Positions 39,087 through 64,000 of a DNA stretch of 64,000 nt are shown here, in pieces (the first letter of the stretch is position 1; every line of letters starts with the position of its first letter). The stretch covers positions 1 through 64,000 of the IMG/VR virus record IMGVR_UViG_3300032236_001613; one strand, 5' to 3'. Under the pieces are notes generated by a model, which was given only the letters and a program-made list of their open reading frames with translations, did no database searches and was not told the DNA's origin. A program made the translations under genes and the position numbers.

Positions 39087-39661
39087 GTAATAGAGGTGAT
39101 ATAGATATCGATTTTGGAAATCGAGATGATTTGTTATCTCTAATTCCGCATGTTGCTGCTGCACGTTACGAGAGAGGAGAATTAAAAAAACATAACACTG
39201 GTGTGTATCTACAAAAGATCCCAGTAAATCCGATAAGTAATGTCGCAAGCATCGATTACGAAACCGCAGAAAAACGCGGCTATTTTAAACTAGATTTTTT
39301 GAATGTTAGTGTATACAAAGATGTTAAAAGTGAAGAGCATTTAATTAAATTAATGAACAAGGAGCCACTATGGAATCTTTTACTTCAAGACGAGTTTGTA
39401 AATCTGTTATTTCATTTAAAGGGGCACGGGGAGGTATTGAGAGCAACTTGCCCGAATTCAGTGGAACAATTAGCTGCAGTCCTTGCGATGATACGCCCCG
39501 CGAAACGCTATCTGATTGGGAAAGATTGGACTACGGTGATGAAAGAGATTTGGGTGAAACCGGATAACGACGAATATTATTTCAAAAAAGCACACAGTAT
39601 TTCTTACGCAATGCTAATTGTCGTTCAAATGAACTTAATATGTGAGCAATTGGAAGTTTAA
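39083..39661 (+). CDS. miniature DNA polymerase III alpha (C-family palm)-like protein
   Basis: DIDIDF, KHNTGV, KLDFL, LAAVLAMIRP, FKKAHSISYA correspond in order to DnaE motifs. Confidence 0.75.
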   Translation: MSNRGDIDIDFGNRDDLLSLIPHVAAARYERGELKKHNTGVYLQKIPVNPISNVASIDYETAEKRGYFKLDFLNVSVYKDVKSEEHLIKLMNKEPLWNLLLQDEFVNLLFHLKGHGEVLRATCPNSVEQLAAVLAMIRPAKRYLIGKDWTTVMKEIWVKPDNDEYYFKKAHSISYAMLIVVQMNLICEQLEV

Positions 39662-51397: not shown

Positions 51398-52281
51398 TGT
51401 TTATGCTTCTTACTGTGCACAGCATCCTTCTCTGGCTCACTGTCTACGTCAAAATCAAATCCATGTTTGTCATCAGATCGATCAGGTAATGCTAAGGGTT
51501 CTTCTTCAGTGTCTAAATCAGCTAATCGATTACGCATAGCTTTTACTTGATCAGGACTCATTTGATCAGTCTCTGACTTATCCGATACTCCGGATAATGC
51601 TTTGACTCCTGCTAACTGTGCTAATCTATCTAACCCAAACTCTGCAGCACTGTGCGCTGCTGCCTTTGTAGCAATATCAGCAGCTTGAGGTTCTTGACTA
51701 TCTTTAGGTTCGTCATCTAGTGTACCTGCAACTCTTTGATCTACATAAGATCCTACATCGGTTTCGTCAACTATATTTCCTTCTTCATCTGCGGTAGAAT
51801 CTACGCCATATGTTTGCGGATCGTACTCAAGACTTACAGATTCGAATTTTTTGGTGTTAGGATCTTGATAAGTTAATAAAGCTTCATAGGGATTTTCATC
51901 ACCAAACGATGTGTGTAACCACGGTACTCCACCTTCGCTGACTCCCGTTTCAAAATGTGAACCCCAGGGCATAGTTCCATGCGGCCCGTTACCAATCTCG
52001 GTTACATCATTTACACCAGGTTGCCATTCTTCAAACTCGGGTGCTTCACTATAACTAGAATCCAAATAAAGCGTACCCATATTCTTTACAGTCCAACTAG
52101 TAGCTGCAGCTACTAGTCCATCGATCATTGAACCGGCTTCAACTGCTGAAGCAGCAGCCGCTGTAGCAGCCACAGGCTCCGCAGCAGTACCTACAGGCAA
52201 CTTAGCACCTGTGGCCGCAGCTATTCCTGCTGCTCCTAGACCTTTGAGAAAATCTCTACGGGAAATTTCATATATACGCAT
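51394..52281 (-). CDS. acidic protein with twin-arginine (Tat)-like signal
   Basis: MRIYE-ISRRDFLKGLGAAGIAAA; late promoter. Confidence 0.6.
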   Translation of the reverse strand: MRIYEISRRDFLKGLGAAGIAAATGAKLPVGTAAEPVAATAAAASAVEAGSMIDGLVAAATSWTVKNMGTLYLDSSYSEAPEFEEWQPGVNDVTEIGNGPHGTMPWGSHFETGVSEGGVPWLHTSFGDENPYEALLTYQDPNTKKFESVSLEYDPQTYGVDSTADEEGNIVDETDVGSYVDQRVAGTLDDEPKDSQEPQAADIATKAAAHSAAEFGLDRLAQLAGVKALSGVSDKSETDQMSPDQVKAMRNRLADLDTEEEPLALPDRSDDKHGFDFDVDSEPEKDAVHSKKHKQ

Positions 52282-52366
52282 AATGTTTTATTTACCGGCA
52301 ACACAGACCTTTTCGCGCGAAGCGCCGAGCGCAGATTTTTTTATAACCCCGATAAATACCCAGACA

Positions 52367-52714
52367 ATGCATATCAAAGAACTGGTTACCTTAGACGAAC
52401 ACTGGCTACAAACAGCAGCTCAACAACTACAACCCGAACAACTACGTCAACGTTTACAAAACCTTGAACAATGGTTCTCCGACGAAGGCTCAGCTGCTGC
52501 AGATATGATCGAAACTTATAACGAATGGATACAGGGCACGGCAGATCCAGAATCAGTCCAAATGGCTAATCAACAACTGGTACGCTTGCTAAAATACTTG
52601 GGACTGGCCGGAATCGCTGTACTACCAGGTAGCACTTTCTTACTACCAGTCTTGATTAAAATAGCTCAACATTACGGCATAAAACTAATACCCGACCCTA
52701 TTAAACCACACTAA
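52367..52714 (+). CDS. small protein with hydrophobic C-terminal segment
   Basis: Start MHIKELVTLDE after TAAATA; LGLAGIAVLPG..LLPVLIK. Confidence 0.55.
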   Translation: MHIKELVTLDEHWLQTAAQQLQPEQLRQRLQNLEQWFSDEGSAAADMIETYNEWIQGTADPESVQMANQQLVRLLKYLGLAGIAVLPGSTFLLPVLIKIAQHYGIKLIPDPIKPH

Positions 52715-52758
52715 AATTTGATTGACAATCTTGATTATATTATAGTATATTACAATAT

Positions 52759-52956
52759 ATGATAATACGATATCTGGAAAATCCACATACTGGACTACTT
52801 ACACTGGTACGACACAACGATTTAGATTTAAAATGGGCTAGAAGATTAACTACATTGATTATACACGAGTTTGAACAAAATAGCCCAGAACATACTATGT
52901 TCTTACTACGCAACTTTAATCGACTACATAACAACGACATCGAAGATTGGACTTGA
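52759..52956 (+). CDS. hypothetical protein
   Basis: TTGACA promoter directly upstream. Confidence 0.45.
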   Translation: MIIRYLENPHTGLLTLVRHNDLDLKWARRLTTLIIHEFEQNSPEHTMFLLRNFNRLHNNDIEDWT

Positions 52957-52958
52957 TA

Positions 52959-53237
52959 CTAAAAACTAATACCATTGTCAACAAAATACCCTTCAACAAT
53001 GTTTCGAACTAATTGCGGGTGACAATGCACATACTCACTGCGTACCGTAAACCTGTCCTTTATTATGCTTAATATCCTGCTTTCATGCAACCGATCAGGT
53101 ATACTATACGTTTTTAAAAAATAACAACTGGGGTTGGCTGTCTTATATGCTCTTAGCCTACTACTGGGATTGCCTGTGATTCCTAACTTACAACGGTGCG
53201 GCTTGTCTGGATCTACCATGATATAATAATAAAGCAT
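52959..53237 (-). CDS. GIY-YIG/T5orf172-like protein
   Basis: YYIM...KLGIT.NP..RL..Y.TANP...E..I...EY. Confidence 0.7.
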   Translation of the reverse strand: MLYYYIMVDPDKPHRCKLGITGNPSSRLRAYKTANPSCYFLKTYSIPDRLHESRILSIIKDRFTVRSEYVHCHPQLVRNIVEGYFVDNGISF

Positions 53238-53297
53238 ACGGCTTATTTAATACTAGAATCACTATAACTACCCAAAAAAATTACTGCGCAAAATTTT

Positions 53298-53594
53298 TTA
53301 TGGTGGGAAATTTTTGAATGAGGCAGTTTTGACCCATGCATCAGGCACCATACGATGCTTGCTGACAAATAAATCATGCAATTGATCACCTGTGACATTA
53401 TAACGACGACAGACTTTTTGCATGATTTGATCAATTATGTCATAGTTAAACTTGAGCCCTTGACTGTGTCTGACCCTTAATGCACGCTCTAAAGCAGCTA
53501 CAGCTTTACTGGGATGAGGGGTTCCTGAAACATGTGCAGGCTTCATGGACTGTTGAGAATCAAATAGGTCGATTAAAGATCTTAAGGAACGCAT
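53298..53594 (-). CDS. small late protein
   Basis: TATAAATA-5-ATG; LHDLFVSKH...PD.W. Confidence 0.55.
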   Translation of the reverse strand: MRSLRSLIDLFDSQQSMKPAHVSGTPHPSKAVAALERALRVRHSQGLKFNYDIIDQIMQKVCRRYNVTGDQLHDLFVSKHRMVPDAWVKTASFKNFPP

Positions 53595-53947
53595 ACGAAT
53601 ATTTATATACATTGTAGAGAGGCCTATAGTACACGCAAAAAATTGCGCTGCAAAAAATAAAGACCACGCAGATCTCGGGGCCTGGTGGTTTTACGACCCC
53701 GGGGTATGGTTAGCAAGCCCCAACAGCAGCACAGCACGCAGCTGAGCACTATATACCTCCCGTGGGGTCTATATGCCTCCCACCTGAGCCGGCCGGCACA
53801 GCTGCCCCGGAAAATTTTTTCTTTTAGTTTTCCGAGAAAAAGATAGCTTATTGTGCCGTTGGGAGAGCCTCGCAATAAAAAAGCACGGGCTAGGGTTTTT
53901 GTAATTAGATAATAGTACAGTTGTGCTATATTATATACGCTGTTAGT

Positions 53948-54033
53948 AACCTGTGCATAGTAATATAACTGTAACGCAAATGCTAAGTTATTGTTTTTGT
54001 TAGCATTTTTTTAATTGCGTTACTACACAGGTT
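53948..54033 (+). other. long nested inverted repeat (hairpin/cruciform or structured RNA)
   Basis: AACCTGTG/CACAGGTT, GTAACGCAA/TTGCGTTAC, AAATGCTAA/TTAGCATTT. Confidence 0.7.
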
Positions 54034-54426
54034 CCCGTTAATTAAAAAAGCGCAGTGCAGTTTGTGTGCACGGGGTAGTCCCCGTGTTAATAAAAATACA
54101 CAGTTGCAGTACCTGCAGCAACGCAGTGGGAGGTGCCCCTCGATTACATCAGCTGCTGTGCAGATTTTTTAGTGGGGTCTGGTTGACAGAGTTAACTTAA
54201 CTGTTAAACTTAACATATGCAAACAGCAGCACATACAACACGCAGTCAACAACAGCAGGAGCAGGGTGTGTGCGTGCGCTGCTGGGAGGTCTCTCGCAAA
54301 GCAGTCTTTAAACTGCGCTGTGCGTTACTGGGAGAATCCCGTGTTTGCAAAAGCAGCGCACACGTTTGTGCAATTGGGAGAATCCCTAGTTTGTTGCTGC
54401 TGCACGCAAAAGTGCACCAGTGGGAA

Positions 54427-54515
54427 GATTACAAAAACTTAATCTAATAGTGCTTGCAACTGCTGTTGCCGGCGCTATACTACATAACGTAGCAATAGTG
54501 CTACAGCACGCACAA
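54427..54515 (+). promoter_or_regulatory. early promoter cassette, copy 1
   Basis: GATTACAAAAACTTAAT-10-TTGCAA-16-TATACT-GTAGC/GCTAC hairpin-AGCACGCAC. Confidence 0.75.
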
Positions 54516-54528
54516 TAGGAATCTGTAT

Positions 54529-54816
54529 ATGCCCTCGTATCGTATTCGTTTGCTTGCCAATGGCGAAGTTGAGATTGCTGTCAACAGCCGCCGCGCACGT
54601 GGTCGTGTAGTAGCTGAAAAGACTGTTGAGGTTGAAGAGCCCGCAGCAGCAAAGCGTCAGACCAAAGCAGCGCAAGTGCGCGACAAGATCCGTCAAGTCA
54701 AGCCTGTAATGGGTGATGCTGGGCGCCGCGTTGTTAGCGCATGGGCACGCACAAAGTTGGGTATGAATCCTAGCATGGCTGCTACTTATGTGAAAAACAA
54801 CTGGACCTGCTGCTAG
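54529..54816 (+). CDS. basic early hypothetical protein
   Basis: AGGA SD after cassette; C-terminal LGM...A.TY..N. Confidence 0.7.
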   Translation: MPSYRIRLLANGEVEIAVNSRRARGRVVAEKTVEVEEPAAAKRQTKAAQVRDKIRQVKPVMGDAGRRVVSAWARTKLGMNPSMAATYVKNNWTCC

Positions 54817-55016
54817 TTTACAGCAGAAGAGAGCAGTAGCATTAGTGCTGCTGCTCTCACCAGTTGTATTCTAAGAGTTGGGTTTGGGCCGGCGGGGTTT
54901 GACCCCATAGCAGTTTCTGCAATGCTAAGGCCTTTAGCGGGGTATTCAAGAATAAAGGTTGATCTGTAGATAACTACTGTTATACTAACAGCGTTAAGCA
55001 CGCTAAGGAGTTTGTT

Positions 55017-55127
55017 ATGGCTCGTGTTAAGAAGAATGGGTGCCTAATGGCACGTAAGACCCGACAAGTTAAACATGCCGGATATAAGTGCGCTGCAACT
55101 GGGCGCTGGCGCCGAGGGTTCAAATAA
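55017..55127 (+). CDS. 36-aa Arg/Lys-rich peptide
   Basis: MARVKKNGCLMARKTRQVKHAGYKCAATGRWRRGFK; TAAGGAG SD and promoter upstream. Confidence 0.6.
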   Translation: MARVKKNGCLMARKTRQVKHAGYKCAATGRWRRGFK

Positions 55128-55225
55128 TGGCTAAGGTACGGCGTCCTCGTAATCAACAGCGTGTGTTGCAGCAGCGAATTGCCTGCAGCCGTGTGGGCGG
55201 ATGTCGTCCAAAACGGAGCCGCTAA
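55127..55225 (+). CDS. 32-aa Arg-rich peptide
   Basis: MAKVRRPRNQQRVLQQRIACSRVGGCRPKRSR; TAATG coupling. Confidence 0.55.
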   Translation: MAKVRRPRNQQRVLQQRIACSRVGGCRPKRSR

Positions 55226-55362
55226 TGTTAATCGACGATGAATCCGAAGACTATTACGAGCGTCGTGTGGCTCGTGCTGATGCTGCTTTCGATCTCTTTA
55301 TTGATTGGACTAGTGTTGCAGCCATGATTGGGATCGTGTTATATTTGTTGCTGCGTTGTTAA
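55225..55362 (+). CDS. 45-aa peptide with C-terminal TM helix
   Basis: MLIDDESEDYYERR...VAAMIGIVLYLLLRC; TAATG coupling, GGAG SD. Confidence 0.55.
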   Translation: MLIDDESEDYYERRVARADAAFDLFIDWTSVAAMIGIVLYLLLRC

Positions 55363-55389
55363 ACGTTTTCCTGTGTGTTGTGCATGGTT

Positions 55390-55418
55390 GGGCGGAGTTC
55401 GCATCCGCCCTTTTTTTT
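55390..55418 (+). terminator. intrinsic terminator
   Basis: GGGCGGA-7-TCCGCCC T8. Confidence 0.9.
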
Positions 55419-55540
55419 AGCTGGCTGCGGTCTCGGGGTTCCTCCCACTAACAGCGTTTTGGTATAATACTCCTGCTGCAGTATGTGTTGGGAGGCGCCC
55501 CAGTGTTTAAAATGTTTGTGCGCTATTTTCTTATTGGGAT

Positions 55541-55637
55541 GATTACAAAAGCTTAATGTTAAAGTGCTTGCTTTATTTTTGTGTGTGCTTATAATAGCAA
55601 TTGTAGCAATAAAGCTACGCATAAAATAAGCACGCAC
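55541..55637 (+). promoter_or_regulatory. early promoter cassette, copy 2
   Basis: GATTACAAAAGCTTAAT-10-TTGCTT-16-TATAAT-GTAGC/GCTAC-AGCACGCAC. Confidence 0.7.
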
Positions 55638-55638
55638 T

Positions 55639-55875
55639 ATGTACACATTGGAAGTTAGCTATCCGTTGACGCTGTATTGGAACAGCATTAACGTAGATCG
55701 GGAGATCTCTGAAGCTGTTAATGCTACGAGCACAGGCAGCGGAGCGGGATTTGGGCAACGTGATCTCACGTTCCGCTTTACAACTGCAGAGGCTGCTAAT
55801 GCTGCTGCAGAGCGAGCACGACGTATACACGCTAGCATCTCGTGCAACGTGTCTGCTGACGCTTACTACGCTTAA
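55639..55875 (+). CDS. early hypothetical protein
   Basis: Follows cassette 2; GSGAGFGQRDL.F.F. Confidence 0.65.
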   Translation: MYTLEVSYPLTLYWNSINVDREISEAVNATSTGSGAGFGQRDLTFRFTTAEAANAAAERARRIHASISCNVSADAYYA

Positions 55876-56020
55876 ACAACTGCCTCGTTACGCACAGCTG
55901 AAAATGCTGTGCGTGCAGGCGGGGTCAGAATCCCAGGAAGAAAAAATTGCAAAGCTCGATGCAGGGGTGGGGTCAGATCCCGTGCAAACTTTTACGCAAA
56001 CTTTTGCAAGACAGTGAGAT

Positions 56021-56110
56021 GATTACAAAAACTTAATGCAAAAACAGGTTGCAACTGCTACTAGACTTGCTATGCTACATAACGTAGCGATACTGCTACA
56101 GCACGCACAA
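56021..56110 (+). promoter_or_regulatory. early promoter cassette, copy 3
   Basis: GATTACAAAAACTTAAT-11-TTGCAA-16-TATGCT-ACATAACGTAGC..GCTACAGCACGCACAA. Confidence 0.75.
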
Positions 56111-56120
56111 AGGGTTAGAT

Positions 56121-56423
56121 ATGAACGAGATTGCTAAAGCCCTAATCACACTCGCTAGCGAGATTAAGGAGCAGGCGGGCCCTGTCTCACTGATCTTCCA
56201 TGCAGCAGGAAGTCAGGGCGACTTTGAGACCGCGTTGTACATCTTCAACGACAAGAGTCTCTTCAACGCTACTTACTTCACTGAAGAAGAGCTTGAGAAG
56301 TTTAACCTCATCATGCCCGCTATTGCAGATGGGCTCAACAAGTTGCAGAAGTTTGACGAGCAAATTGCTGCATTAGATGCCGCTAAGTACCACTCAGCAG
56401 ACTATCTCAAAGCAGTTAACTGA
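56121..56423 (+). CDS. early hypothetical protein
   Basis: Follows cassette 3; terminator at about 56435-56466. Confidence 0.7.
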   Translation: MNEIAKALITLASEIKEQAGPVSLIFHAAGSQGDFETALYIFNDKSLFNATYFTEEELEKFNLIMPAIADGLNKLQKFDEQIAALDAAKYHSADYLKAVN

Positions 56424-56631
56424 CACATAGCCGGCGCATAGTAGGGAACTGCTATGCGCTTTTTTGTTGCCGTTAAGAACCCCGCAGAAGGTTTTTACGC
56501 ACATGTATATAAAGTCTCGGGGTAGCCCCAAGGACTGCAGCCGCAAACGTGAACGAGGTCTAGCGGGGTATTTAAAAAGGTTGACGGGCTGTAGTTGTGT
56601 CTGTATGCTTGTGCTGCTAAAGGAGCACGCA

Positions 56632-56739
56632 ATGAACTTTAAGTACTTCGCACCATGGCTTTTTGCATTCATCTTATTACTGTTGGGACACTTTACTGCT
56701 GCTATCTGCATTGCCGTGTTGATCTTGCTCTGCAGCTGA
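56632..56739 (+). CDS. 35-aa hydrophobic membrane peptide
   Basis: MNFKYFAPWLFAFILLLLGHFTAAICIAVLILLCS; TTGACG-17-TATGCT promoter, AAGGAG SD. Confidence 0.6.
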   Translation: MNFKYFAPWLFAFILLLLGHFTAAICIAVLILLCS

Positions 56740-56820
56740 AAAATCTTTGTGAGGCAGAGTTGACAGCGTTGTTGCAACGTGTAAACTACTAATGTAGAAC
56801 TAATAACAAGGATCTCATTT

Positions 56821-57024
56821 ATGCACGCTAAGTTCAAAATTGTAGATCGTAAGACTGGAGTTGTACTCTACGACCAAGTGCACGGAGTCGGTCGCGCCAC
56901 GCACTTGCTGTATGGTGCTCGTGCAAGTAATACGCGAGTGTTCAAGACTGATGAGCGAGGCTCGCGTGAAATTACTCTCAACTTTAATATTTGGCAGCTG
57001 GAAAACGGCTTACGGGAGGCTTAA
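56821..57024 (+). CDS. early hypothetical protein
   Basis: TTGACA promoter at 56761, AAGGA SD. Confidence 0.65.
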   Translation: MHAKFKIVDRKTGVVLYDQVHGVGRATHLLYGARASNTRVFKTDERGSREITLNFNIWQLENGLREA

Positions 57025-57203
57025 TGGCTATGCTACAGCGTTACCGTTGCTCGGGCATTGACGGTATGGACAAGGACCATCAGGGAGATTGGGTTCGTTA
57101 CGAAGACTATCTCTCACTGTTACAGAAGTTGGATGAAATCCGCATAAATCTTCTCCAGCTTCGCGATCCACGTTATCGGGACATCCAAAAGGAATTCAAA
57201 TGA
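57024..57203 (+). CDS. early hypothetical protein
   Basis: TAATG coupling, GGAGG SD; G.WVRYED motif. Confidence 0.6.
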   Translation: MAMLQRYRCSGIDGMDKDHQGDWVRYEDYLSLLQKLDEIRINLLQLRDPRYRDIQKEFK

Positions 57204-57445
57204 AAACCAATGACATTAAGAAAGGTCAGCGTATCCAGCAACGTAATGGCTGGTACGGGACTATGTTTGATGACAAGAAGGGCAACATCCGTTGCGTTGA
57301 AGTTGAAGGTGACTTCAAAGAGATTGGGAGTGTTTACGCACACGAGATTATTCGTGCGCAGGATGCTAACGGTGTTTGGCACACAGTCGAACACACCGAA
57401 GCTCAGATGAAACTTAAGTCCAAGTTGGGTGCCATGGGGTGGTAA
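57200..57445 (+). CDS. early hypothetical protein (SH3-like beta)
   Basis: ATGA overlap, AAGGA SD; IKKG.R...GSVY.H.I. Confidence 0.65.
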   Translation: MKTNDIKKGQRIQQRNGWYGTMFDDKKGNIRCVEVEGDFKEIGSVYAHEIIRAQDANGVWHTVEHTEAQMKLKSKLGAMGW

Positions 57446-57539
57446 CACCTTTGTACAGGTACTGTTGATCTTCACAGTAGACAAAAGGTTGGCGAACTCT
57501 TTATAATAGAGGAGTTCGCTAATCCTATGGAGATCAGAG

Positions 57540-57638
57540 ATGTTTGGTCGTCGAAAGGCTACTGTGCGAAAGGTTCGTTCAACGCCTCGTTCGCGTGCTG
57601 CTTACGGTTCTACTACGACTCGCCGCCGTAAGCGTTAA
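57540..57638 (+). CDS. 32-aa protamine-like Arg-rich peptide
   Basis: MFGRRKATVRKVRSTPRSRAAYGSTTTRRRKR; own promoter, GGAG SD and terminator. Confidence 0.6.
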   Translation: MFGRRKATVRKVRSTPRSRAAYGSTTTRRRKR

Positions 57639-57673
57639 TGATTTTGCGTGCTGCCGCAATGATGCGGCACTTT

Positions 57674-57711
57674 GGGCAATCGTGTTTAGCACCTCGATTG
57701 CCCTTTTTTTT
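57674..57711 (+). terminator. intrinsic terminator
   Basis: GGGCAATCG-12-CGATTGCCC T8. Confidence 0.85.
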
Positions 57712-57856
57712 ATCTGTTGATTCTGCTGCGGGGTATTCCCACTGGCTAAACAATCTACCTATATATACCAGTGCACTATAAGTGAGAACAAGAGCTTAGA
57801 CTGATCTTAATCTACATAAGCCTTACACACCGACGATTTCGTAGTTTTTGGCTTTG

Positions 57857-57993
57857 TAAGTCATTGATTCTAAACACTGCCCCGACATCTAGTAGAGTAG
57901 TTCTGCATACAGCAAACACCGACTCGGGGCAGTTTCGCTACAAGCCGCTGTAGACTATACAGATGAAAACCACTAGGGGTTAAGTCATTGATT
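57857..57993 (-). promoter_or_regulatory. two IHF-consensus sites flanking a 10-bp inverted repeat
   Basis: TAAGTCATTGATT at 57857 and 57981 (reverse complement AATCAATGACTTA = WATCAAN4TTR); ACTGCCCCGA/TCGGGGCAGT between. Confidence 0.6.
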
Positions 57994-58202
57994 TCATTAG
58001 AGTGGAACTACCGATCAAATAGATTAAAAAGATTAGATGATGAAAGAGTTGGTCTTAGTTTTCCGGCCGGGGTTGCCCCGTGATCTAATAATAGCACGGT
58101 TTGGTCGAGATCTGTTTACATTCTTTAAAGACGGGGCCAGGTTGACAGATTTAACTTAACGCATTAATATTGGCGTTGTAAACAATAATTGGAGCAGCTG
58201 AG

Positions 58203-58349
58203 ATGCTGGTTTATGTAGAATTGGCTTTAGTTGTGGCTTATATTGCATGGGTCGCACGGTTGTCGCTGAATGCAATGAAAACGGATGCCAGGGACGAACT
58301 GCGTAAGAGCTTTAAGGAGTTCCGCCGAGCGTTTGAAGATCTGCACTAG
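58203..58349 (+). CDS. 48-aa single-pass membrane peptide
   Basis: MLVYVELALVVAYIAWVARL...; TTGACA promoter, GGAG SD. Confidence 0.55.
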   Translation: MLVYVELALVVAYIAWVARLSLNAMKTDARDELRKSFKEFRRAFEDLH

Positions 58350-58470
58350 TACAGCCGGTGGGGTGGTTCTCACAGACTGATGCGCTGCATCAAAAAGTCT
58401 GTGAGAACCGGTTGACAACTGCTCTGCAGCGTTTATAATAGAATACACACGCAACCACCATAGGTGATTT

Positions 58471-58761
58471 ATGGCTACTACGAATGTGATCCGCATTGCT
58501 TTAGACGAGCGTATTGTTGAACGCTTGAAGAAGCCAATCCTCAAGGTTTGGCAGCAGGTCAGTCACGATGTCATGCGAGATGCTGAAGATATGGGCGAAC
58601 GCATTGACAATGAGAGCGCCATAGAGTGCTGCATTGATGCAGATCGTTTGCGCTATGAGGCTAACGATCGCGCTGCAGACGACTTTTTTAATATGATTTG
58701 CACCGAGCACGGCTATCCAGCTGTTCTCACGTTCCTTTCCAAAAAGATACGATTGGTTTAA
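58471..58761 (+). CDS. early hypothetical protein
   Basis: TTGACA-17-TATAAT promoter, AGGTG SD. Confidence 0.7.
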   Translation: MATTNVIRIALDERIVERLKKPILKVWQQVSHDVMRDAEDMGERIDNESAIECCIDADRLRYEANDRAADDFFNMICTEHGYPAVLTFLSKKIRLV

Positions 58762-58956
58762 TGAGATGATCATAGAAGTTATTAAAGCTGTCTACAACAG
58801 CCGAACGGGACAGCTGAATGTTACACTCAGCGACGGTGCCCGCCAGGTTGTGGTAGAAGGTGTAGAAAACATCGAGCGGGATTACCTGCTACGCGAGTTT
58901 TACAGTCTCGCACGTTGGTCTGCTGCAAACGTGAACAAGGTCTAGCGGGGTATTAT

Positions 58957-59118
58957 ATGGATATAGAACGAGAACAACTGCACGCACGTATACAACAACT
59001 GAAAACTCGTGCAGCAGCCGCAGAAGCATTACTGCTGAAGATCGAAGTCACCCTATGGGATCGTTCGGAAGCTAAAGACATTCAAGATCTCATACACAAC
59101 TATTTCAAGAGGGACTAG
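58957..59118 (+). CDS. small coiled-coil hypothetical protein
   Basis: Probable start MDIEREQL. Confidence 0.5.
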   Translation: MDIEREQLHARIQQLKTRAAAAEALLLKIEVTLWDRSEAKDIQDLIHNYFKRD

Positions 59119-59119
59119 T

Positions 59120-59422
59120 ATGCGCTACCGTCCAAGTCAAGAAACTATTGATGCTATTCTAAAGAAACAAATGACTGATGAGGATATTGCTCGCTACCGA
59201 CGTGCCTCACGCTTATACAAGATCTCGGGTGTTGTTGCTATTACTATCTGGCTGGGATGGATCGTAACTGGCTTCTTACACTTCAACAAAGCCAACGATA
59301 TCTTGTTTGAAGGCTTGTGGGCATCGTTGTTCTTTTGGGGTTACAGCATTTGGTTCGGTAACTGCGATCTACATCGTATGGATTACGTAGATCGTTTAGA
59401 TCGCAAAAAGCGTTCTCAGTAA
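59120..59422 (+). CDS. two-TM membrane protein
   Basis: Two hydrophobic segments; GAGG SD. Confidence 0.65.
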   Translation: MRYRPSQETIDAILKKQMTDEDIARYRRASRLYKISGVVAITIWLGWIVTGFLHFNKANDILFEGLWASLFFWGYSIWFGNCDLHRMDYVDRLDRKKRSQ

Positions 59423-59661
59423 TGCAAACGAAAGCTGGACGTAACCGGCCGTGGGGCTAATCCCAAGACTACAAACGCGAAGCTGGAGACAGGTTCTTGG
59501 GAAAATAGCACGACCGTACTATAAAACGACCGTGCTAATAGCACGACCGTTTGATCCCATGACTACAAACTTGCGCAAGCTCTTTGACCTAGTGGGAGAG
59601 GTTGACAACCCGTTTGCAGCCTCTTATAATGTATTTGTAGAGTTAACATAAGGCGGTTGAT

Positions 59662-59931
59662 ATGATTAAATTCAACAAGCACTTTGTCTCGAATGGCACT
59701 TTGCGTGCTCGTTGCTGGTATACTGTGGACAATCGTATTGATGGACGTCGATGCGTCTCAATATACGCTAAAGACTACGGACACCAATTGGCTCAGGTTA
59801 TTACCACTGCAGAGTACAAGAACGATACAGACATCTCAACGGATTACTTTGAAAAAGGTAAGATTGTTTTGTTTGATGATCATCCTCTGTACTCAGAAGC
59901 GCGAAAGCGTGCCTTAGCCAACGAACGCTAA
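59662..59931 (+). CDS. early hypothetical protein (D-x5-DYF motif)
   Basis: TTGACA-17-TATAAT promoter; terminator at 59940-59970. Confidence 0.7.
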   Translation: MIKFNKHFVSNGTLRARCWYTVDNRIDGRRCVSIYAKDYGHQLAQVITTAEYKNDTDISTDYFEKGKIVLFDDHPLYSEARKRALANER

Positions 59932-60398
59932 GTCGTTCTAATACGCAGGCTCAAGTCCTGCGTATTTTTTAACAATTGGAAACCCCAGTGAACTACGTGC
60001 ACGCACGTGATTGCCCGTGGGGTAGCCCCAAGATCTGGTTCTTTGGCCATAGAAGAAGGTTTTTTTACTGTCTTGGGGTTGCCCCACTTTTAGCCGCTGC
60101 AGGCTGCCGTATTTGATAGCGGGGTATTTAAAATCCCACTATAAAAGAGCTACAGCTGGCAACAGGATCTTGTGGTCACAACACTTTTTTAATATTATCA
60201 AAAATATTTTTAAGATTATGTTGACTTCTCGATAGATTGTGTTAAATTAGTACACAGAGCCGAACAGGGCGGCTTAACTTAACTAGGGGAGTTCCATTGA
60301 TGTTACTGCAATCTAAAACTCTCACCACCAGAAACTGGGCAAAAGCTCAGCATCCGGTGGGAACTGCTCTCAGTCGTTGTCGAAACTAAAACCATAAA

Positions 60399-60944
60399 CT
60401 AGACTGGGATGTAAAGCAACTCCTCGCCGGGTGGGACTACTAAATCCCTGGCCCTCCTCACCAAATCAGGATCCGCTAGCGTGAGAACATCCAACAACGC
60501 AGTCTTCTCCTCAAGGTAAACACGAGCAAACTTCGGATCATACCTTGTGATTGTGGCAGAATTGGAAATCATGTCCGCAACTTTGATCGTCTGCGCCGCC
60601 GCAGGCGCTCGACTCAAATGCTCACGATCAATGGCTTTACGTGCACGTCGATTACCGTCCGTGGGCCTAGATACATCTGTAAGCCAATGCACAAGGTTAG
60701 CCACCGCCTCTCCAAACTCCTCATAAAGCACATCATAGGTGACACTAGTGTCTTCCAAAACATCATGCAACCAAGCTGCTGCCAACATTTCATCCGTGTG
60801 CTCAACTGATTGCACAATACCCACAACTTCTGCTGGATGCACAATATAAGGCTCGTTTGTGTACTTACGACGCTGCCCAACAGCAGCATGAGCAGCAGTA
60901 GCAAAGATACGAGCATGATTCACCAATGGGTTTGTTTTGTTCAT
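60399..60944 (-). CDS. HD-domain small alarmone hydrolase (SpoT-HD/Mesh1-like)
   Basis: AH..Q.RK...EPYIVHP..V, AAWLHDVLEDT, IKVAD..SN; TTGACG-17-TATAAT-6-ATG. Confidence 0.85.
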   Translation of the reverse strand: MNKTNPLVNHARIFATAAHAAVGQRRKYTNEPYIVHPAEVVGIVQSVEHTDEMLAAAWLHDVLEDTSVTYDVLYEEFGEAVANLVHWLTDVSRPTDGNRRARKAIDREHLSRAPAAAQTIKVADMISNSATITRYDPKFARVYLEEKTALLDVLTLADPDLVRRARDLVVPPGEELLYIPV

Positions 60945-61095
60945 GAGCACATTATAACAGCAAATCCACGACCCGTCAATCAATCGATAGCGGGGTATTT
61001 AAAGACCCCACTACTACTGGGGCATATATAGCTAGGCCGATAGCGGGGTATTTAAAAGGAATAGCTGTGCACCCAAAGAGTGCACAGCATATCTA

Positions 61096-61512
61096 TCAAA
61101 CAATTACTTGGTAGGGCTTCCGCCAACTGCCTACGTGAATGCTGCAGTAGTATGCAGTATCAAAGTAGTCGATCTCACTGCGAGTATTGTCGTACCATTC
61201 AGCTGACTTGAGAGCTGCTAACAACTCTTCCAACGCCGTACGAGCAACACCTTCATAGTGGTCATGAATCCAATAGACGTTAACATCCTCATAGCCACTA
61301 GTATTGGGCCGAAAACCATGCATCTGATAACGCTGGTTCTGCCCACAGAACTCATTGCTGTTGCCGATAAAGTCGATAGGTCCCGAAGTCAACTTCAACT
61401 GAATAGTGCTGTGATTGCCAACACTGAGAGAACCCTTGAGCCCATACTTCTTCAACACGGGCTTGACAGCTGCTGCGATAACAGCTTTCTTCTCTTGATT
61501 CATATAAGCCAT
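61096..61512 (-). CDS. early conserved phage protein (possibly LPD29-like)
   Basis: K.SLSV.NHSTI...WYDNTRSEIDYFDTAYY; AGGAG SD. Confidence 0.6.
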   Translation of the reverse strand: MAYMNQEKKAVIAAAVKPVLKKYGLKGSLSVGNHSTIQLKLTSGPIDFIGNSNEFCGQNQRYQMHGFRPNTSGYEDVNVYWIHDHYEGVARTALEELLAALKSAEWYDNTRSEIDYFDTAYYCSIHVGSWRKPYQVIV

Positions 61513-61566
61513 TGCATGCTCCTAAACAAAGGGCGACAGCACTATTGCTGCCGCCCATGCAATATA

Positions 61567-61794
61567 CTACTCTTCCCAACCGTAGTCGATCTCGCTAGTG
61601 GTATCAAAAGTCCACTGCAAACGATCACGGAAGTTAACAGAACGCACACGATCACGCTCACGATCCTGCAACTCAATGTCTGCAGCATCTTCCTCGTCAT
61701 CGGTGATATCAGCTTCGAGCTCAGCATCATCTGGCAACTCGATATCCATACGCTCATCAGCGTCCAAAACATCAGCAATGGTAAAACGGCTCAT
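61567..61794 (-). CDS. highly acidic 75-aa protein
   Basis: About one third D/E; AAGGAG SD and TTGACC promoter. Confidence 0.65.
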   Translation of the reverse strand: MSRFTIADVLDADERMDIELPDDAELEADITDDEEDAADIELQDRERDRVRSVNFRDRLQWTFDTTSEIDYGWEE

Positions 61795-61916
61795 CTCAAG
61801 TGCTCCTTTGCACTAACTCTACAGCTCTAAGTATACGCTCTGCGTACTATAGGTCAACCGTTTTTAAAAAGAAAAGTTGGGCAGTTTTGAGTGTTGCCCA
61901 GCACCGGAGCAGCCTG

Positions 61917-62132
61917 TTAAACTGGCAGCTTGATCTCAAGGATCTGAGCCTGCTCGCTCACAAAGTTATTGCGAACGATGCCCGTCCAAAACGCAGTCTC
62001 AGTGATGTGATAACGCAAACCGCCCGAGGCAGTGCCATTGCCCGAAAGCATACGAGCTACAGCACGCACACTCTTGAACGTGCGGCGCTCGCCCGAAGGA
62101 AAAGTAACGTCAATCTTGATTGCCTTGTTCAT
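61917..62132 (-). CDS. small putative DNA-binding protein (NUMOD1-like)
   Basis: RTFKSVRAVARML; AGGAG SD; TTGACA promoter. Confidence 0.55.
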   Translation of the reverse strand: MNKAIKIDVTFPSGERRTFKSVRAVARMLSGNGTASGGLRYHITETAFWTGIVRNNFVSEQAQILEIKLPV

Positions 62133-62239
62133 GTCATTTGCTCCTGTTTGTGATGACATTTACTAACTCAACGCATGTAGTCTACAGTCTTTTATCCAAC
62201 CTGTCAACTACTTTTTACCAACTTTCTTCAAACAATTTT

Positions 62240-62314
62240 TGGTAGGACCGGAGAGATTCGAACTCTCGACCAACGGATTAAAAGTCCGCTGCTCTACCGC
62301 TGAGCTACGATCCC
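62240..62314 (-). tRNA. tRNA-Lys (UUU), CCA encoded
   Basis: GGGATCGTAGCTCAGCGGTAGAGCAGCGGA-CTTTTAA-TCCGTTGGTCGAGAGTTCGAATCTCTCCGGTCCTACCA folds as a cloverleaf. Confidence 0.95.
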
Positions 62315-62336
62315 ATTCGAAACTAGTGTATACTAC

Positions 62337-62504
62337 TTAATAAGCGTCTGTAACCTCGCGGTCCGTACGCCAGTTGTAGCGCAATTCCCGCTCATGGTCC
62401 TTGGCACTCTTGTGTGTACGAGGACGGTTAAATGTGTTAAGATTGCGGGCTACAGGATTGCTCTTGCGGCGCCGGTTCTTGTCCAAATAGTTGTGATCGT
62501 TCAC
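62337..62504 (-). CDS. 55-aa basic peptide (missed by ORF track)
   Basis: GTG start, AGGAG SD, TTGACC-17-TATACT; MNDHNYLDKNRRRKSNPVARNLNTFNRPRTHKSAKDHER... Confidence 0.6.
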   Translation of the reverse strand: MNDHNYLDKNRRRKSNPVARNLNTFNRPRTHKSAKDHERELRYNWRTDREVTDAY

Positions 62505-62967
62505 TGTCTGCTCCTGGCAGCGTTTAGTGTCTATACAGTATACGCAGCCCGTGGGGTAAGGTCAACCACTCCCCAAGAAATATTTTTTTAAGCTTGAACT
62601 AGGTCGTGGGGCAGGATCCCAAGATTTGGATCTCATGATTCTTGACATCTTGTGGGGCAAAATCATATAATATAGGCTGAAATTTGTGGCAAAAGTGCCA
62701 CAAAATCGGAGGTTCTCTTGACCATTTCTTGAGATTTTGAGAGGAAAAGTTTAGAAAATTTTGGGCAAAATTGAGGTTGACCTCCTCGGGGATGAGAGGC
62801 TATGCTAGAATACTTCTCTCACCTTTCGCCATCATTCTGGCCATTTTTTCGTCATTATTTCAGATGTTTTGGCCATTTTTTCTCATTGTTCTCATCAGAA
62901 TTTCTACACACGGAGAGTGTGTATAGATTCAGAGTTTTATCGTTGTTAGTCGATGATGAGTCTACTG

Positions 62968-63201
62968 TTAATCAAAGTTACCAATGGATAGAGTCACGCT
63001 TGAACGGATTACGCGAGCCAAGAGTAGGATTGCAGCAGTATGTTGGATATCAAGCTGTTGAGTAGTCCAATGATAGTAGTTAACCACAGCCCAGTTCCAT
63101 AGTTGACTAACCAGTACAGCAGCGAATAGTACAGCTACGATTGTTAGAGCTGTGCGTAAGAACAGTTCGTTCCAGGAGGGTAGTTTGTTTGTGTCTAACA
63201 T
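62968..63201 (-). CDS. small membrane protein
   Basis: Two hydrophobic stretches; TTGACA-17-TACAAT promoter, AAGGA SD. Confidence 0.6.
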   Translation of the reverse strand: MLDTNKLPSWNELFLRTALTIVAVLFAAVLVSQLWNWAVVNYYHWTTQQLDIQHTAAILLLARVIRSSVTLSIGNFD

Positions 63202-63330
63202 AGTGATCGGATCCTTATGTGTTAGTGTGTAGAGAGTATTGTACGAGGGTTAGTTGGAGATGTCAAGTGTTAGTAAAAAATCTGCGCGATACGCTAGTGC
63301 GTAGTATTCTACAGCGGGGTATTATGGTCG

Positions 63331-63603
63331 TTAGGCAAAAGTATGTATCCAACGCCAGTCGCTGTACTTAAGTAGCAATAGAGTGTATTCTGGTGGAGTG
63401 TGTATAGTTAGCAGTTCGATATCGCCTCTTTCTATTAGAGGAGCTGCCACTTTGTATTCGCGTCGTCCAGGAGGGAGTTCTTTAACACAGTAGTGGGCAA
63501 ATGTCAGTTGATGATAGCCGCCCACTTCCTGTATGTAACATAACAAGTGATCGATTTTAAAGTATCTAGGCCAATTAGTTGCGATCATCGCGAGATAGTG
63601 CAA
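63331..63603 (-). CDS. hypothetical protein
   Basis: Overlaps upstream ORF; ends TLLLLKYS. Confidence 0.45.
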   Translation of the reverse strand: MHYLAMIATNWPRYFKIDHLLCYIQEVGGYHQLTFAHYCVKELPPGRREYKVAAPLIERGDIELLTIHTPPEYTLLLLKYSDWRWIHTFA

Positions 63604-63766
63604 ACAAGCGGTAGATATTGTAGACAGTAATCACTGCTGCTGCTGTAAAAATGATCTTCAGTAGGACTGCGCCCGCAGGTGGGTAGAGGTAAGCCACTAC
63701 GAAAACTGCAAAAATAGTAGCCAATAACAGGGCTGTCTTAGCAGCCGCAACCATATCGATATTCAT
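63575..63766 (-). CDS. small two-TM membrane protein
   Basis: AGGAG SD; TTGACA-17-TATAAT promoter at about 63797-63825. Confidence 0.6.
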   Translation of the reverse strand: MNIDMVAAAKTALLLATIFAVFVVAYLYPPAGAVLLKIIFTAAAVITVYNIYRLFALSRDDRN

Positions 63767-64000
63767 AATCTTCTGCTCCTTTTTAAAGTGTGTACATTAT
63801 ACTAGAGTTAGAGTCGGCTGTCAACGACGCTGCAGCAGCTCGGTCAAGCAGCGGGCCAAGTAGTAGTCTTCGTGCTCAATAGCACGTACAGCCAAACTTT
63901 TGACATTAGCCCAAAGATCGGGTTGACTGTCCTCTGCAGCGTAGTGTTCTTCGACCTGCACACCACGAGTCTTCAACTGCTCAATCAACTCTGGATAGGC

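What the first reader, a model, noticed from the sequence alone, without database searches (positions are those of the whole stretch)
54936..63323. Strand-polarised 11-mer AGCGGGGTATT repeated 8 times, only in the early region
Seen: copies at 54936, 56562, 57727 (TGCGGGGTATT), 58944, 60118, 60989, 61042 and 63313. All are intergenic and on the + strand, even where neighbouring genes switch to the - strand. Three extend to an identical GATAGCGGGGTATTTAAA, and two share GCAAACGTGAAC(G/A)AGGTCTAGCGGGGTATT (56543, 58925). I saw no full copy in the first 53 kb. Orientation independent of transcription argues against a promoter or SD element. Inference: a polar DNA signal (Chi/KOPS-like, DNA-entry/translocation, priming or protein-loading site) marking the first-entering DNA, possibly bound by a co-ejected protein from the neighbouring cargo array.
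Basis: partly seen in the sequence, partly recalled or inferred. Interest (0 to 1): 0.75.

Follow-up and report, generated by a model that had tools for sequence, protein, structure and literature searches.

The report
Conserved oriented box between phage early genes
A 14-base DNA word sits, always on the same strand, in the gaps between small early genes of an uncultivated 328-kb freshwater jumbo phage. It is kept letter for letter in related phages, which marks it as a real recognition site of unknown partner rather than chance, a promoter or a ribosome-binding site.

Summary
The window holds 7 exact AGCGGGGTATT plus TGCGGGGTATT, all on the + strand and all between genes. The 328-kb genome adds one copy at 84439 and a near copy at 81208, with none on the minus strand.

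The window is the start of a Rak2/PA5oct-like jumbo myovirus. The copies lie in a GC-rich region of small genes dense in sigma-70 promoters.

The full consensus is T-M-Y-AGCGGGGT-W-T-T, with no conserved promoter hexamer, start codon or hairpin partner. In a close relative the box is identical at orthologous gaps while the flanks diverge, and gene cassettes between boxes are permuted. About 30 related metagenomic contigs carry same-orientation arrays of 2-4 boxes, most often 26 bp apart. These follow a conserved promoter-like block that faces away from a tRNA(CAU) gene.

My best reading (confidence 0.35) is a binding site for a sequence-specific DNA-binding protein. It would be the core of terminator-box-promoter boundary cassettes that regulate or insulate early transcription units. 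Cassette shuffling by direct-repeat recombination would keep the boxes co-oriented.

Origin iterons, a recombination core, an RNA-level signal and a terminus or entry signal remain open. Chi/KOPS and DNA-entry roles have no support, and three relatives carry an inverted copy that follows gene direction.

The parts
54936..54946 (+). Box copy 1 (AGCGGGGTATT). It lies 29 nt after stem-loop GGGGTTTGACCCC (54894-54906) and 12 nt before the -35 of promoter-like site 54959-54986 (TTGATC-16-TATACT), which precedes the SD and ATG at 55017.
56562..56572 (+). Box copy 2. It follows terminator 56433-56460 and stem-loop GGGGTAGCCCC (56519-56529). It lies 8 nt before the -35 of 56581-56609 (TTGACG-17-TATGCT), which precedes the gene at 56632. 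It shares a 33-nt identity with copy 4.
57727..57737 (+). Box copy 3, variant TGCGGGGTATT. It lies 15 nt after the T-run of an intrinsic-terminator-like hairpin (57674-57711) that ends gene 57544-57720.
   Evidence: D19, D20
58944..58954 (+). Box copy 4. The TAG just before and overlapping it is the stop of ORF 58766-58945, and an ATG follows at 58957. It is therefore intercistronic and co-oriented with the genes.
   Evidence: D8
60118..60128 (+). Box copy 5 (GATAGCGGGGTATTTAAA). It lies 32 nt after stem-loop GGGGTTGCCCC (60075-60085), at the end of the + strand gene block where minus-strand genes begin.
   Evidence: D3
60989..60999 (+). Box copy 6 (identical 18-mer). It lies between minus-strand genes, 9 nt from the -35 of minus-strand promoter-like site 60979-60951 (TTGACG-17-TATAAT), in reverse orientation to that promoter.
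61042..61052 (+). Box copy 7 (identical 18-mer), 53 bp from copy 6. It abuts the minus-strand terminator 61088-61064 of gene 61096-61512. It is orthologous to L126 4223, where the box is identical in otherwise diverged DNA.
63313..63323 (+). Box copy 8. It lies 47 nt from the -35 of minus-strand promoter-like site 63266-63238 and about 510 nt downstream of the conserved + strand block. It is orthologous to L126 8133.
62777..62806 (+). Conserved promoter-like block (TTGACC-18-TATGCT, containing GGGGATGAGAGGCTAT). In 13 related contigs the same block lies 67-195 nt upstream of the box array, always in the same orientation as the boxes.
62807..62920 (+). Pyrimidine-rich leader with TTCTC(A/T)C-type repeats downstream of the block. 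The same kind of leader separates block and array in relatives. A weak 41-nt match to PA5oct nt 96-133 was found.
62240..62314 (-). tRNA-Lys(UUU), facing away from the block. In relatives a tRNA(CAU) occupies this position. In this genome tRNA(CAU) is at 84131-84208 (-), 230 nt left of box copy 84439.
60129..60988 (.). Segment carrying a minus-strand gene (60614-60916) and its own promoter. It is bounded by two identical 18-mers containing the box, so it looks like a cassette.
   Evidence: D3

Best explanation
The 11-mer is the core of a 14-nt asymmetric recognition box, T-M-Y-A-G-C-G-G-G-G-T-W-T-T. I read it as the binding site of a sequence-specific DNA-binding protein, most likely phage-encoded, that works at the borders of early transcription units.

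In this genome single boxes sit in the spacer between the terminator or stem-loop of one unit and the sigma-70 promoter of the next. Together these form a composite terminator-box-promoter cassette of the PeSL kind. In relatives, 2-4 boxes in head-to-tail arrays with a preferred 26-bp register form a stronger site just downstream of a conserved promoter.

Inferred mechanism: the bound protein regulates or insulates early transcription, either by occluding or modulating the adjacent promoter or by blocking read-through on the box strand. The uniform orientation is largely a by-product of how the region evolves. Cassettes duplicate, insert and swap by recombination between directly repeated boxes, which preserves box orientation whatever the direction of the gene carried.

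Shown: existence, consensus, conservation, array architecture, position classes and cassette permutation.
For: 1. Strong excess and exclusive strand use.
2. Consensus from 105 non-identical instances extends 3 nt on each side and then stops. It has no fixed -10/-35, start codon or hairpin partner.
3. Phylogenetic footprint: at two orthologous gaps between this genome and L126 (75-87% related), the box is the only long identical run.
4. About 30 IMG/VR contigs have same-orientation clusters. Neighbour spacing has a sharp mode at 26 bp (12 of 50) across lineages whose spacers differ. Other spacings fall at 31-35 and 49-53 bp, and 53 bp occurs both here and in G003. A conserved register with free spacer sequence is typical of cooperative protein binding to DNA.
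5. Position: after stem-loops or terminators and 1-14 nt before a -35 in several copies. These are 54936, 56562, L126 2856 and G003 128939, plus 60989 in reverse. TTGAC occurs within 40 nt downstream in 12 of 96 instances against 4.2 +/- 2.0 at random positions.
6. The region holds other repeated regulatory modules, as hyperplastic regions of T4-type phages do; PMC4122927.
7. Cassettes between boxes are permuted between G000 and L126. One cassette is flanked by identical 18-mers and another stretch by 33-mers.
Against: No candidate binding protein was found. Neighbouring conserved genes are a GT9-like protein and a GIY-YIG-like protein that is absent from this genome, and the rest are ORFans.

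The distance to promoters is variable, and most copies (84 of 96) have no TTGAC nearby. The 14 near-identical minus-strand early promoters at 71-80 kb work without the box, so it is not a general early-promoter element.

A 26-bp register (2.5 helical turns) is unusual for known operators or iterons. There are no expression or binding data: no RNA run could be listed.

Some copies are intercistronic and follow gene direction (58944, L126 2408, and the inverted copies in L111/L250/L276). That would also fit an RNA-level signal.
Confidence: 0.35

Rival explanations
1. Origin iterons. The arrays are binding sites for a replication initiator at a phage origin, activated by the conserved promoter that fires into them. 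The dispersed single boxes in this genome are auxiliary or titrating sites.
For: Arrays are direct repeats of 2-4 copies in one orientation with a regular register. A TA-rich TATAGTGTATA-type stretch follows the arrays, and A-tract repeats precede the block. Perfect DnaA boxes lie 144-290 nt upstream of the arrays in G003, L165, L243 and L276. A promoter reading into the repeats recalls transcription-activated origins of lambda, T7 and T4 oriF/oriG (established knowledge).
Against: DnaA-box enrichment is weak (P of about 0.03-0.06) and absent in this genome. No Rep-like gene is adjacent. T4-type phages are not known to use iteron-binding initiators. In this genome nine copies are spread over 30 kb and only two are adjacent. 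GC skew follows gene direction only.
Confidence: 0.17
2. Recombination core. The box is itself the crossover site of a cassette-exchange system. Either a site-specific enzyme acts on it, or it serves as micro-homology in the way PeSLs are proposed to. The result is an integron-like string of cassettes bounded by co-oriented boxes.
For: Co-orientation regardless of the direction of the enclosed gene is what circle integration or excision between direct repeats produces. Segments between boxes are permuted between G000 and L126: S2-S3-S4 against S2-S4-S3. Segment 60129-60988 is flanked by identical 18-mers, and 56540/58922 share 33 nt. Synteny with L126 breaks within about 40 nt of boxes 61042 and 63313. 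Arrays evolve by tandem duplication in L190 and L145. A GIY-YIG-like gene sits about 760 nt from arrays in 11 relatives.
Against: No recombinase was found, and the GIY-YIG-like gene is absent from G000 and G003. Several breakpoints lie 170-560 nt from the nearest box rather than at it. Fourteen nucleotides is short for homologous recombination. A conserved 26-bp register in arrays is not explained. Breakpoints must be intergenic anyway, so the coincidence is only about P 0.03 by my rough count.
Confidence: 0.18
3. RNA-level signal. The box acts in transcripts as AGCGGGGUAUU. It could be a processing site (GU|AUU fits the RNase E preference RN|WUU), a factor-dependent terminator or pause signal, or a repeated protein-binding motif in a non-coding RNA made from the conserved block promoter.
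For: Arrays are always co-oriented with the block, which has a TAnnnT -10 signature, and lie 67-195 nt downstream of it. They are followed by convergent genes, so the transcript would be non-coding. Intercistronic copies follow gene direction, including the inverted copies in three relatives. Variants in G003, G004 and L304 read AGCGGGGTTTTT, like the 3' half and tail of a terminator. The relative PA5oct makes abundant ncRNAs of unknown role in its early region (PMC7318152).
Against: There is no conserved pairing partner, so it is not an intrinsic terminator: CCCC lies upstream in only 13% of instances. Copies 54936, 56562 and 57727 lie after terminators and before promoters, where little RNA is expected. 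Copies 60989 and 61042 lie antisense to their neighbours. Rfam finds nothing. PA5oct ncRNAs lack the motif. No RNA data are available.
Confidence: 0.15
4. One reading: a polar DNA signal tied to a genome end. It could serve packaging or terminal-repeat border recognition, an injection stop, end protection of the Chi kind, or strand-specific nick sites as in T5.
For: The strand polarity in this genome is real. PA5oct, a relative, has a 39-kb terminal repeat made of small early genes, and both borders of that repeat carry arrays of short direct repeats and pyrimidine-rich repeats. A 41-nt stretch of the leader at 62809-62848 matches PA5oct nt 96-133 at about 80% (z only 3.6). In 6 of 10 relatives' contigs the array lies within 3.3 kb of a contig end.
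Against: No terminus is mapped here. The source-run contig spans 50.5-56 kb without a break, and contig depth is flat by construction. G003's 'terminal repeat' is only a ~100-bp overlap at its ends, which I read as an assembly overlap of a circular or permuted map. Contig breaks can equally come from strain variation in a hyperplastic region. Chi and KOPS are host-wide words, whereas this one is clustered, and no related arrays exist in host genomes. Inverted copies exist in relatives.
Confidence: 0.1

Closest known systems
PeSL elements (promoter-early stem-loop cassettes) of T4-type phages (Arbiol et al. 2010, PMC2839356; Comeau et al. 2014, PMC4122927)
   Same: Both are repeated intergenic modules in a hyperplastic region of small ORFan genes. 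Both have a G(n)-loop-C(n) stem-loop followed by a near-consensus sigma-70 promoter. Both are found next to insertions, replacements and displaced ORFs between close relatives. Both are thought to recombine as direct repeats.
   Different: PeSLs are defined by the stem-loop and the promoter themselves. Here the conserved word is a separate GC-rich 14-mer between them. It also occurs without either partner, forms tandem arrays at a fixed locus in relatives, and is conserved across lineages whose TerL proteins are only about 75% identical.
Dispersed asymmetric operators of the phage P1 C1 repressor (17-bp sites at many promoters; from my own knowledge, not checked here)
   Same: Both are asymmetric and therefore oriented words. 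Both are scattered over many intergenic regions near promoters, sometimes in pairs, and read by one protein.
   Different: P1 operators overlap promoters in a defined way and occur in both orientations. P1 is temperate. No repressor gene is known here.
Iterons of plasmid and phage theta origins (P1 oriR, RK2, F, lambda ori; established knowledge)
   Same: Both are head-to-tail direct repeats in a regular register, next to AT-rich DNA and, in some lineages here, DnaA boxes.
   Different: Iterons are 17-22 bp long at about 22-bp spacing beside their rep gene. Here the site is 14 nt at 26, 31-35 or 53 bp, there is no rep gene, and many copies are dispersed.
Short direct-repeat arrays at the terminal-repeat borders of PA5oct (seen in MK797984) and of T7 (SRL/SRR; from memory)
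   Same: Both are arrays of short direct repeats in non-coding DNA at the edge of an early-gene region in a related jumbo phage, together with a pyrimidine-rich repeat leader.
   Different: The repeat sequences differ. No role is established for the PA5oct arrays, and no terminus is known in this genome.
Chi and KOPS polar words
   Same: Both are short, asymmetric and strand-biased.
   Different: Chi and KOPS are 5-8 nt long, spread genome-wide, skewed with replication, and defined by a host machine (RecBCD/AddAB or FtsK). This word is 14 nt long, clustered within 30 kb, and restricted to intergenic gaps.

Membership tests
PeSL (T4-type mobile regulatory cassette) | Composite of a stem-loop directly upstream of a sigma-70-like early promoter | tested here: inconclusive
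   Three of nine copies (54936, 56562, 60118) have a GGGGT(N)CCCC stem-loop 29-32 nt upstream. Two of these (54936, 56562) also have a promoter 8-12 nt downstream. The other copies lack one or both.
PeSL (T4-type mobile regulatory cassette) | Located in a hyperplastic region and next to indels or replacements between close relatives | tested here: met
   The copies lie in a small-ORFan, promoter-dense region. Cassette order is permuted and synteny breaks near boxes relative to L126/L136.
Sigma-70-type promoter element (-35, -10 or UP) | Fixed spacing to a -10 hexamer or TSS | tested here: not met
   There is no information content beyond +12 in 105 aligned instances. Gaps to a -35 range from 1 to 92 nt.
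Phage-RNAP or alternative-sigma promoter | A cognate polymerase or sigma factor is encoded | tested here: not met
   There is no PF00940 match and no PF04542 match in the 328-kb record. The sigma control rang in 10 of 14 control genomes, but the PF00940 control rang nowhere, so that negative is weak.
Shine-Dalgarno or translation signal | Fixed 5-10 nt distance to a start codon | tested here: not met
   Only 58944 and 63313 (and L126 2408) have an ATG within 0-2 nt of the box end. The other copies are 18 to more than 100 nt from any start.
Intrinsic terminator | GC-rich hairpin followed by a U-tract | tested here: not met
   The box has no conserved complementary partner: CCCC lies within 45 nt upstream in 13% of instances, and there is no preferred pairing side. 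The tail is UAUU in 68% of instances.
Origin iterons | Tandem direct repeats in a regular register next to AT-rich DNA and DnaA boxes | tested here: inconclusive
   Arrays with a 26-bp mode and a TA-rich flank occur in relatives. DnaA boxes occur only in some lineages (P 0.03-0.06). This genome has only one adjacent pair of boxes.
Origin iterons | Adjacent initiator (rep) gene | tested here: not met
   Conserved neighbours have no Pfam or PHROG hit. One looks GT9-like and one GIY-YIG-like by eye.
Chi / KOPS-type polar words | Genome-wide distribution with replication-linked skew, and abundance in the host genome | tested here: not met
   Nine of nine copies lie within 54.9-84.4 kb of a 328-kb genome. 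A tandem-box scan of 185,579 species genomes gave 77 hits, none carrying the extended consensus at both copies in a repeated related context and none related to the phage. Single-copy host frequency was not testable.
Known RNA families (Rfam) | Match to a curated covariance model | tested here: not met
   Only tRNAs and one group I intron were found in 50-90 kb and in 8 related loci.
Terminal-repeat border, pac site or injection-stop signal | Lies at a mapped genome terminus or coverage step | not testable with these tools
   Only assembler contigs were available. One contig spans 50.5-56 kb at flat depth. No raw-read or RNA runs were available.

The most novel reading that the evidence does not exclude
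The box is the core site of a previously unrecognised boundary or cassette system of jumbo phages. A dedicated protein would read an oriented 14-mer to wall off early transcription units, and the same co-oriented sites would serve as junctions at which ORFan cassettes, in either gene orientation, are inserted, swapped and duplicated. This would be an integron-like logic in a lytic phage, with a master array beside a conserved promoter and tRNA gene.
Probability: 0.15. Interest if true: 0.75.

Novelty: new variant of a known kind. Interest (0 to 1): 0.5.

Why it matters
Hyperplastic early regions are where jumbo and T4-type phages keep their host-takeover and anti-defence genes, and how these regions are regulated and reshuffled is poorly understood. 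This box is strictly conserved and oriented, is shared by a whole clade of uncultivated freshwater Rak2/PA5oct-like phages, and has a fixed-register array at a conserved locus. That makes it a concrete handle. It can be used to fish for the binding factor, to delimit cassettes in metagenomic contigs, and to test whether PeSL-type shuffling uses a specific site rather than general homology. If the array proves to mark an origin or a terminal-repeat border instead, it would give the first cis-acting replication or packaging landmark for this phage group.

Tried and rejected
- Promoter, SD and hairpin readings were rejected from the logo and pairing analysis.
- Rfam found nothing beyond tRNAs and a group I intron.
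- GenBank phages have no similarity to 54-61.9 kb, to 62.3-63.4 kb or to a relative's array.
- A literature search for the word returned only primers.
- The exact 18-mer GATAGCGGGGTATTTAAA is absent from IMG/VR. Shorter patterns were needed to find relatives.
- Host-genome scan for tandem boxes: 77 unrelated hits and no host clue.
- No T7-like RNAP or sigma factor is encoded.
- I considered that the box copies the 5' end of the neighbouring tRNA(CAU), since GCGGGGU is positions 2-8 of E. coli tRNA-fMet (sequence recalled from memory, not checked here). I rejected this because the neighbouring tRNAs start GGGCC/GGGAC and look like tRNA-Ile2.
- Conserved neighbours as binders: fam1 looks glycosyltransferase-like. 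The fam2 GIY-YIG-like gene is absent from G000 and G003. Other neighbours are ORFans.
- DnaA boxes as proof of an origin: present only in some lineages and weakly significant.
- GC skew follows gene direction and gives no origin signal.
- PA5oct ncRNA001 and ncRNA002 do not carry the motif or similar arrays.
- RNA evidence: no RNA run was listed.
- Depth step for a terminal repeat: read laying failed twice, then returned only flat contig depth.
- A crude longest-ORF classification of flanking gene directions in relatives was too noisy to use.

Full report
**What the window is**

The window is the first 64 kb of a 328,068-bp IMG/VR virus record, rated 92% complete. It encodes a tail sheath, tail fibres, helicases and a large terminase. 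The terminase's nearest cultured relatives are Rak2-like and PA5oct-like jumbo myoviruses at 42-52% identity. Runs that hold the DNA are freshwater metagenomes.

From about 52 to 82 kb, GC content rises from about 0.36 to 0.42-0.46 and the codon usage of the long genes no longer fits. ORFs there are short. Sigma-70-like sites are twice as frequent as expected (35 against 18.7), and four of them are perfect 12/12 matches. Genes run on the + strand from 54.2 to 60.3 kb and on the - strand from 60.4 to about 81 kb. The relative G003 has the same kind of GC island. PA5oct keeps a comparable block of small early genes in a 39-kb terminal repeat (PMC7318152). Calling this an early, hyperplastic region is therefore reasonable, but it is an inference.

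**The observation**

- Nine matches at up to one mismatch compare with 0.8 expected.
- Across the whole genome GCGGGGTATT occurs 9 times on + and never on -.
- The extra copy is at 84439, and a near copy AGCGGGGTTTT is at 81208.
- The longer shared strings are real.
- All copies are intergenic (P of about 9e-4).

**Anatomy in this genome**

- Copies 54936, 56562 and 60118 follow a GGGGT(N)CCCC stem-loop by 29-32 nt.
- Copies 54936 and 56562 precede a -35 hexamer by 12 and 8 nt.
- Copy 57727 comes 15 nt after a terminator T-run.
- Copy 58944 overlaps a stop codon and precedes an ATG.
- Copies 60989 and 61042 lie between a minus-strand terminator and a minus-strand promoter.
- Copy 63313 is 47 nt from a minus-strand -35.
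- Copy 84439 lies between a minus-strand tRNA(CAU) and a + gene.

The box therefore lives in the spacers between transcription units, with no fixed relation to any one signal. The 14 near-identical minus-strand early promoters at 71-80 kb have no box.

**Relatives**

A 1-mismatch scan of five large related records found clusters in two. G003 has copies at an exact 53-bp period, the same spacing as 60989/61042 here. G004 has four copies.

Pattern scans of IMG/VR then gave about 30 further contigs with 2-5 copies, nearly always in one orientation. From 105 distinct instances the consensus is T-M-Y-AGCGGGGT-W-T-T, and information content falls to zero outside it. Because the scans required AGCGGGGT, only the flanking positions are unbiased. 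Folding shows no preferred partner for the G-run. Neighbour spacing has a sharp mode at 26 bp (12 of 50), with further groups at 31-35 and 49-53 bp.

**The array locus**

The array locus has conserved synteny. In order, it contains:
- a small GIY-YIG-like gene, on the minus strand;
- a tRNA(CAU) that looks like tRNA-Ile2, on the minus strand;
- A-tract repeats, plus a pair of DnaA boxes in four lineages;
- a conserved block GGGGATGAGAGGCTATnGT whose variable positions follow TAnnnT, on the + strand;
- a pyrimidine-rich leader of 67-195 nt;
- the boxes, on the + strand;
- a TATAGTGTATA-rich stretch;
- a convergent GT9-like gene.

In this genome the locus is split. The block sits at 62788-62806 beside tRNA-Lys, with box 63313 about 510 nt downstream. 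The tRNA(CAU) sits at 84.1 kb beside box 84439, and the GT9-like gene is at 88.3 kb.

**Close relatives L126 and L136**

L126 and L136 are 75-87% identical to this genome at the nucleotide level. They keep the box at orthologous gaps while the surrounding DNA is barely alignable. Between boxes the gene segments are reordered: homologues of 57.0, 59.1 and 58.5 kb occur in that order in L126.

One segment here (60129-60988) carries a minus-strand gene with its own promoter and is bracketed by identical 18-mers. In L126 the orthologous pair of boxes sits right at the end of a + strand operon. The antisense-looking position of 60989/61042 here may therefore be the result of a cassette insertion.

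**Orientation**

Within this genome the polarity is absolute. However, relatives L111, L250 and L276 each have one inverted copy lying between a stop codon and the next ribosome-binding site of minus-strand genes. Every copy here can also be linked to a co-directional promoter or operon.

**Weighing the explanations**

Four features point to a protein-read DNA site:
- a sharply bounded asymmetric consensus;
- perfect conservation inside diverging spacers;
- a preferred register with free spacer sequence;
- positions at unit borders, partly next to -35 hexamers (12 of 96 against 4.2 expected).

The setting matches the PeSL concept of T4-type phages: stem-loop plus early promoter cassettes in hyperplastic regions that recombine as direct repeats (PMC2839356; PMC4122927). 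Direct-repeat recombination would also explain co-orientation without any genome-wide polar process. I therefore favour a boundary or operator box embedded in PeSL-like cassettes, at a confidence of 0.35.

The other readings each explain part of the data and are not excluded:
- Origin iterons: 0.17.
- A true recombination core: 0.18.
- An RNA-level signal: 0.15.
- A terminus-linked signal: 0.10.

The last gains a lead from PA5oct. Both borders of its terminal repeat carry short direct-repeat arrays and a pyrimidine-rich repeat leader, and there is a weak match to the leader at 62809-62848. In addition, 6 of 10 relatives' contigs have the array within 3.3 kb of a contig end. No terminus could be mapped.

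**What is known**

Nothing similar is in GenBank phages, Rfam or the searched literature. The kind of element (intergenic regulatory or recombination cassette, operator, or iteron) is known. This particular box, its clade-wide conservation and its array locus appear undescribed.

Noticed in passing
window 26682-29258 (+): The large terminase (858 aa) is interrupted by an intein: Hint and LAGLIDADG domains lie at about residues 90-360, ahead of the Terminase_6N match. Most relatives' TerL genes are about 529 aa, and PA5oct matches in two pieces.
   Followed up: partly
L010 11308-11493 (-) = genome 81308-81493; tRNA 3' end near genome 81230: A group I intron (Rfam, 64 bits) lies inside a minus-strand tRNA that ARAGORN misses. 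The near-copy box AGCGGGGTTTT (81208) lies 11 nt beyond its 3' end on the other strand.
   Followed up: partly
genome 71017-80029 (L010 1017-10029), minus strand: Fourteen near-identical early promoters TTGACCTTTTGGTAAAACCTGCTATAAT are each followed by AAGGAG and a small gene. This is a second repeated regulatory cassette family, and it lacks the box.
   Followed up: partly
window 52000-64000 and on to genome ~82000: A GC-rich island (0.42-0.46 against ~0.36) has codon usage unlike the rest of the phage. G003 has an equivalent island (0.51-0.56 against 0.47). The cause is unknown.
   Followed up: partly
window 62240-62314 (-): A tRNA-Lys(UUU) sits alone among the small early genes and is 92% identical to the tRNA-Lys segment of the Haemophilus phage HP1 attP. 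A second tRNA-Lys lies in the main bank of 25 tRNAs at 194-204 kb. An early-expressed spare tRNA-Lys could relate to anticodon-nuclease defences, which is speculation.
   Followed up: no
window 62777-62920 (+): A conserved promoter-like block and pyrimidine-rich repeat leader are shared with 13 related contigs. A 41-nt, ~80% match to nt 96-133 of the PA5oct left terminus was found (z 3.6 only).
   Followed up: partly
window 54421-54515 and 56015-56110; also 54174/58133 and 58410/59600: Other repeated promoter-and-leader modules occur in the + strand gene block (families D2, D4, D6 and D10). The source-run contig also shows the 54.4/56.0 kb repeat as a 'goes back' joint.
   Followed up: no
L329/L330 (PA5oct MK797984 nt 1-130 and 39080-39200): Both borders of the PA5oct 39-kb terminal repeat carry arrays of short direct repeats (GTTCGTCTATAG x3, CACTTATAAG(T/C)CACTTT, TTACATTCATTTTCTT). 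I did not find them discussed in PMC7318152.
   Followed up: no
genome 97700-98200: A collagen-like repeat (GY-x-GS periodicity, CTACGTAG recurring) lies inside a + strand gene. It surfaced only because a palindrome search hit it.
   Followed up: no
genome 86461-86871 (-) and 82950-84125 (+): A ClpS-like adaptor protein (PF02617, E 2.5e-10) and an NT5C-type 5' nucleotidase domain lie near the tRNA(CAU)/box locus.
   Followed up: no
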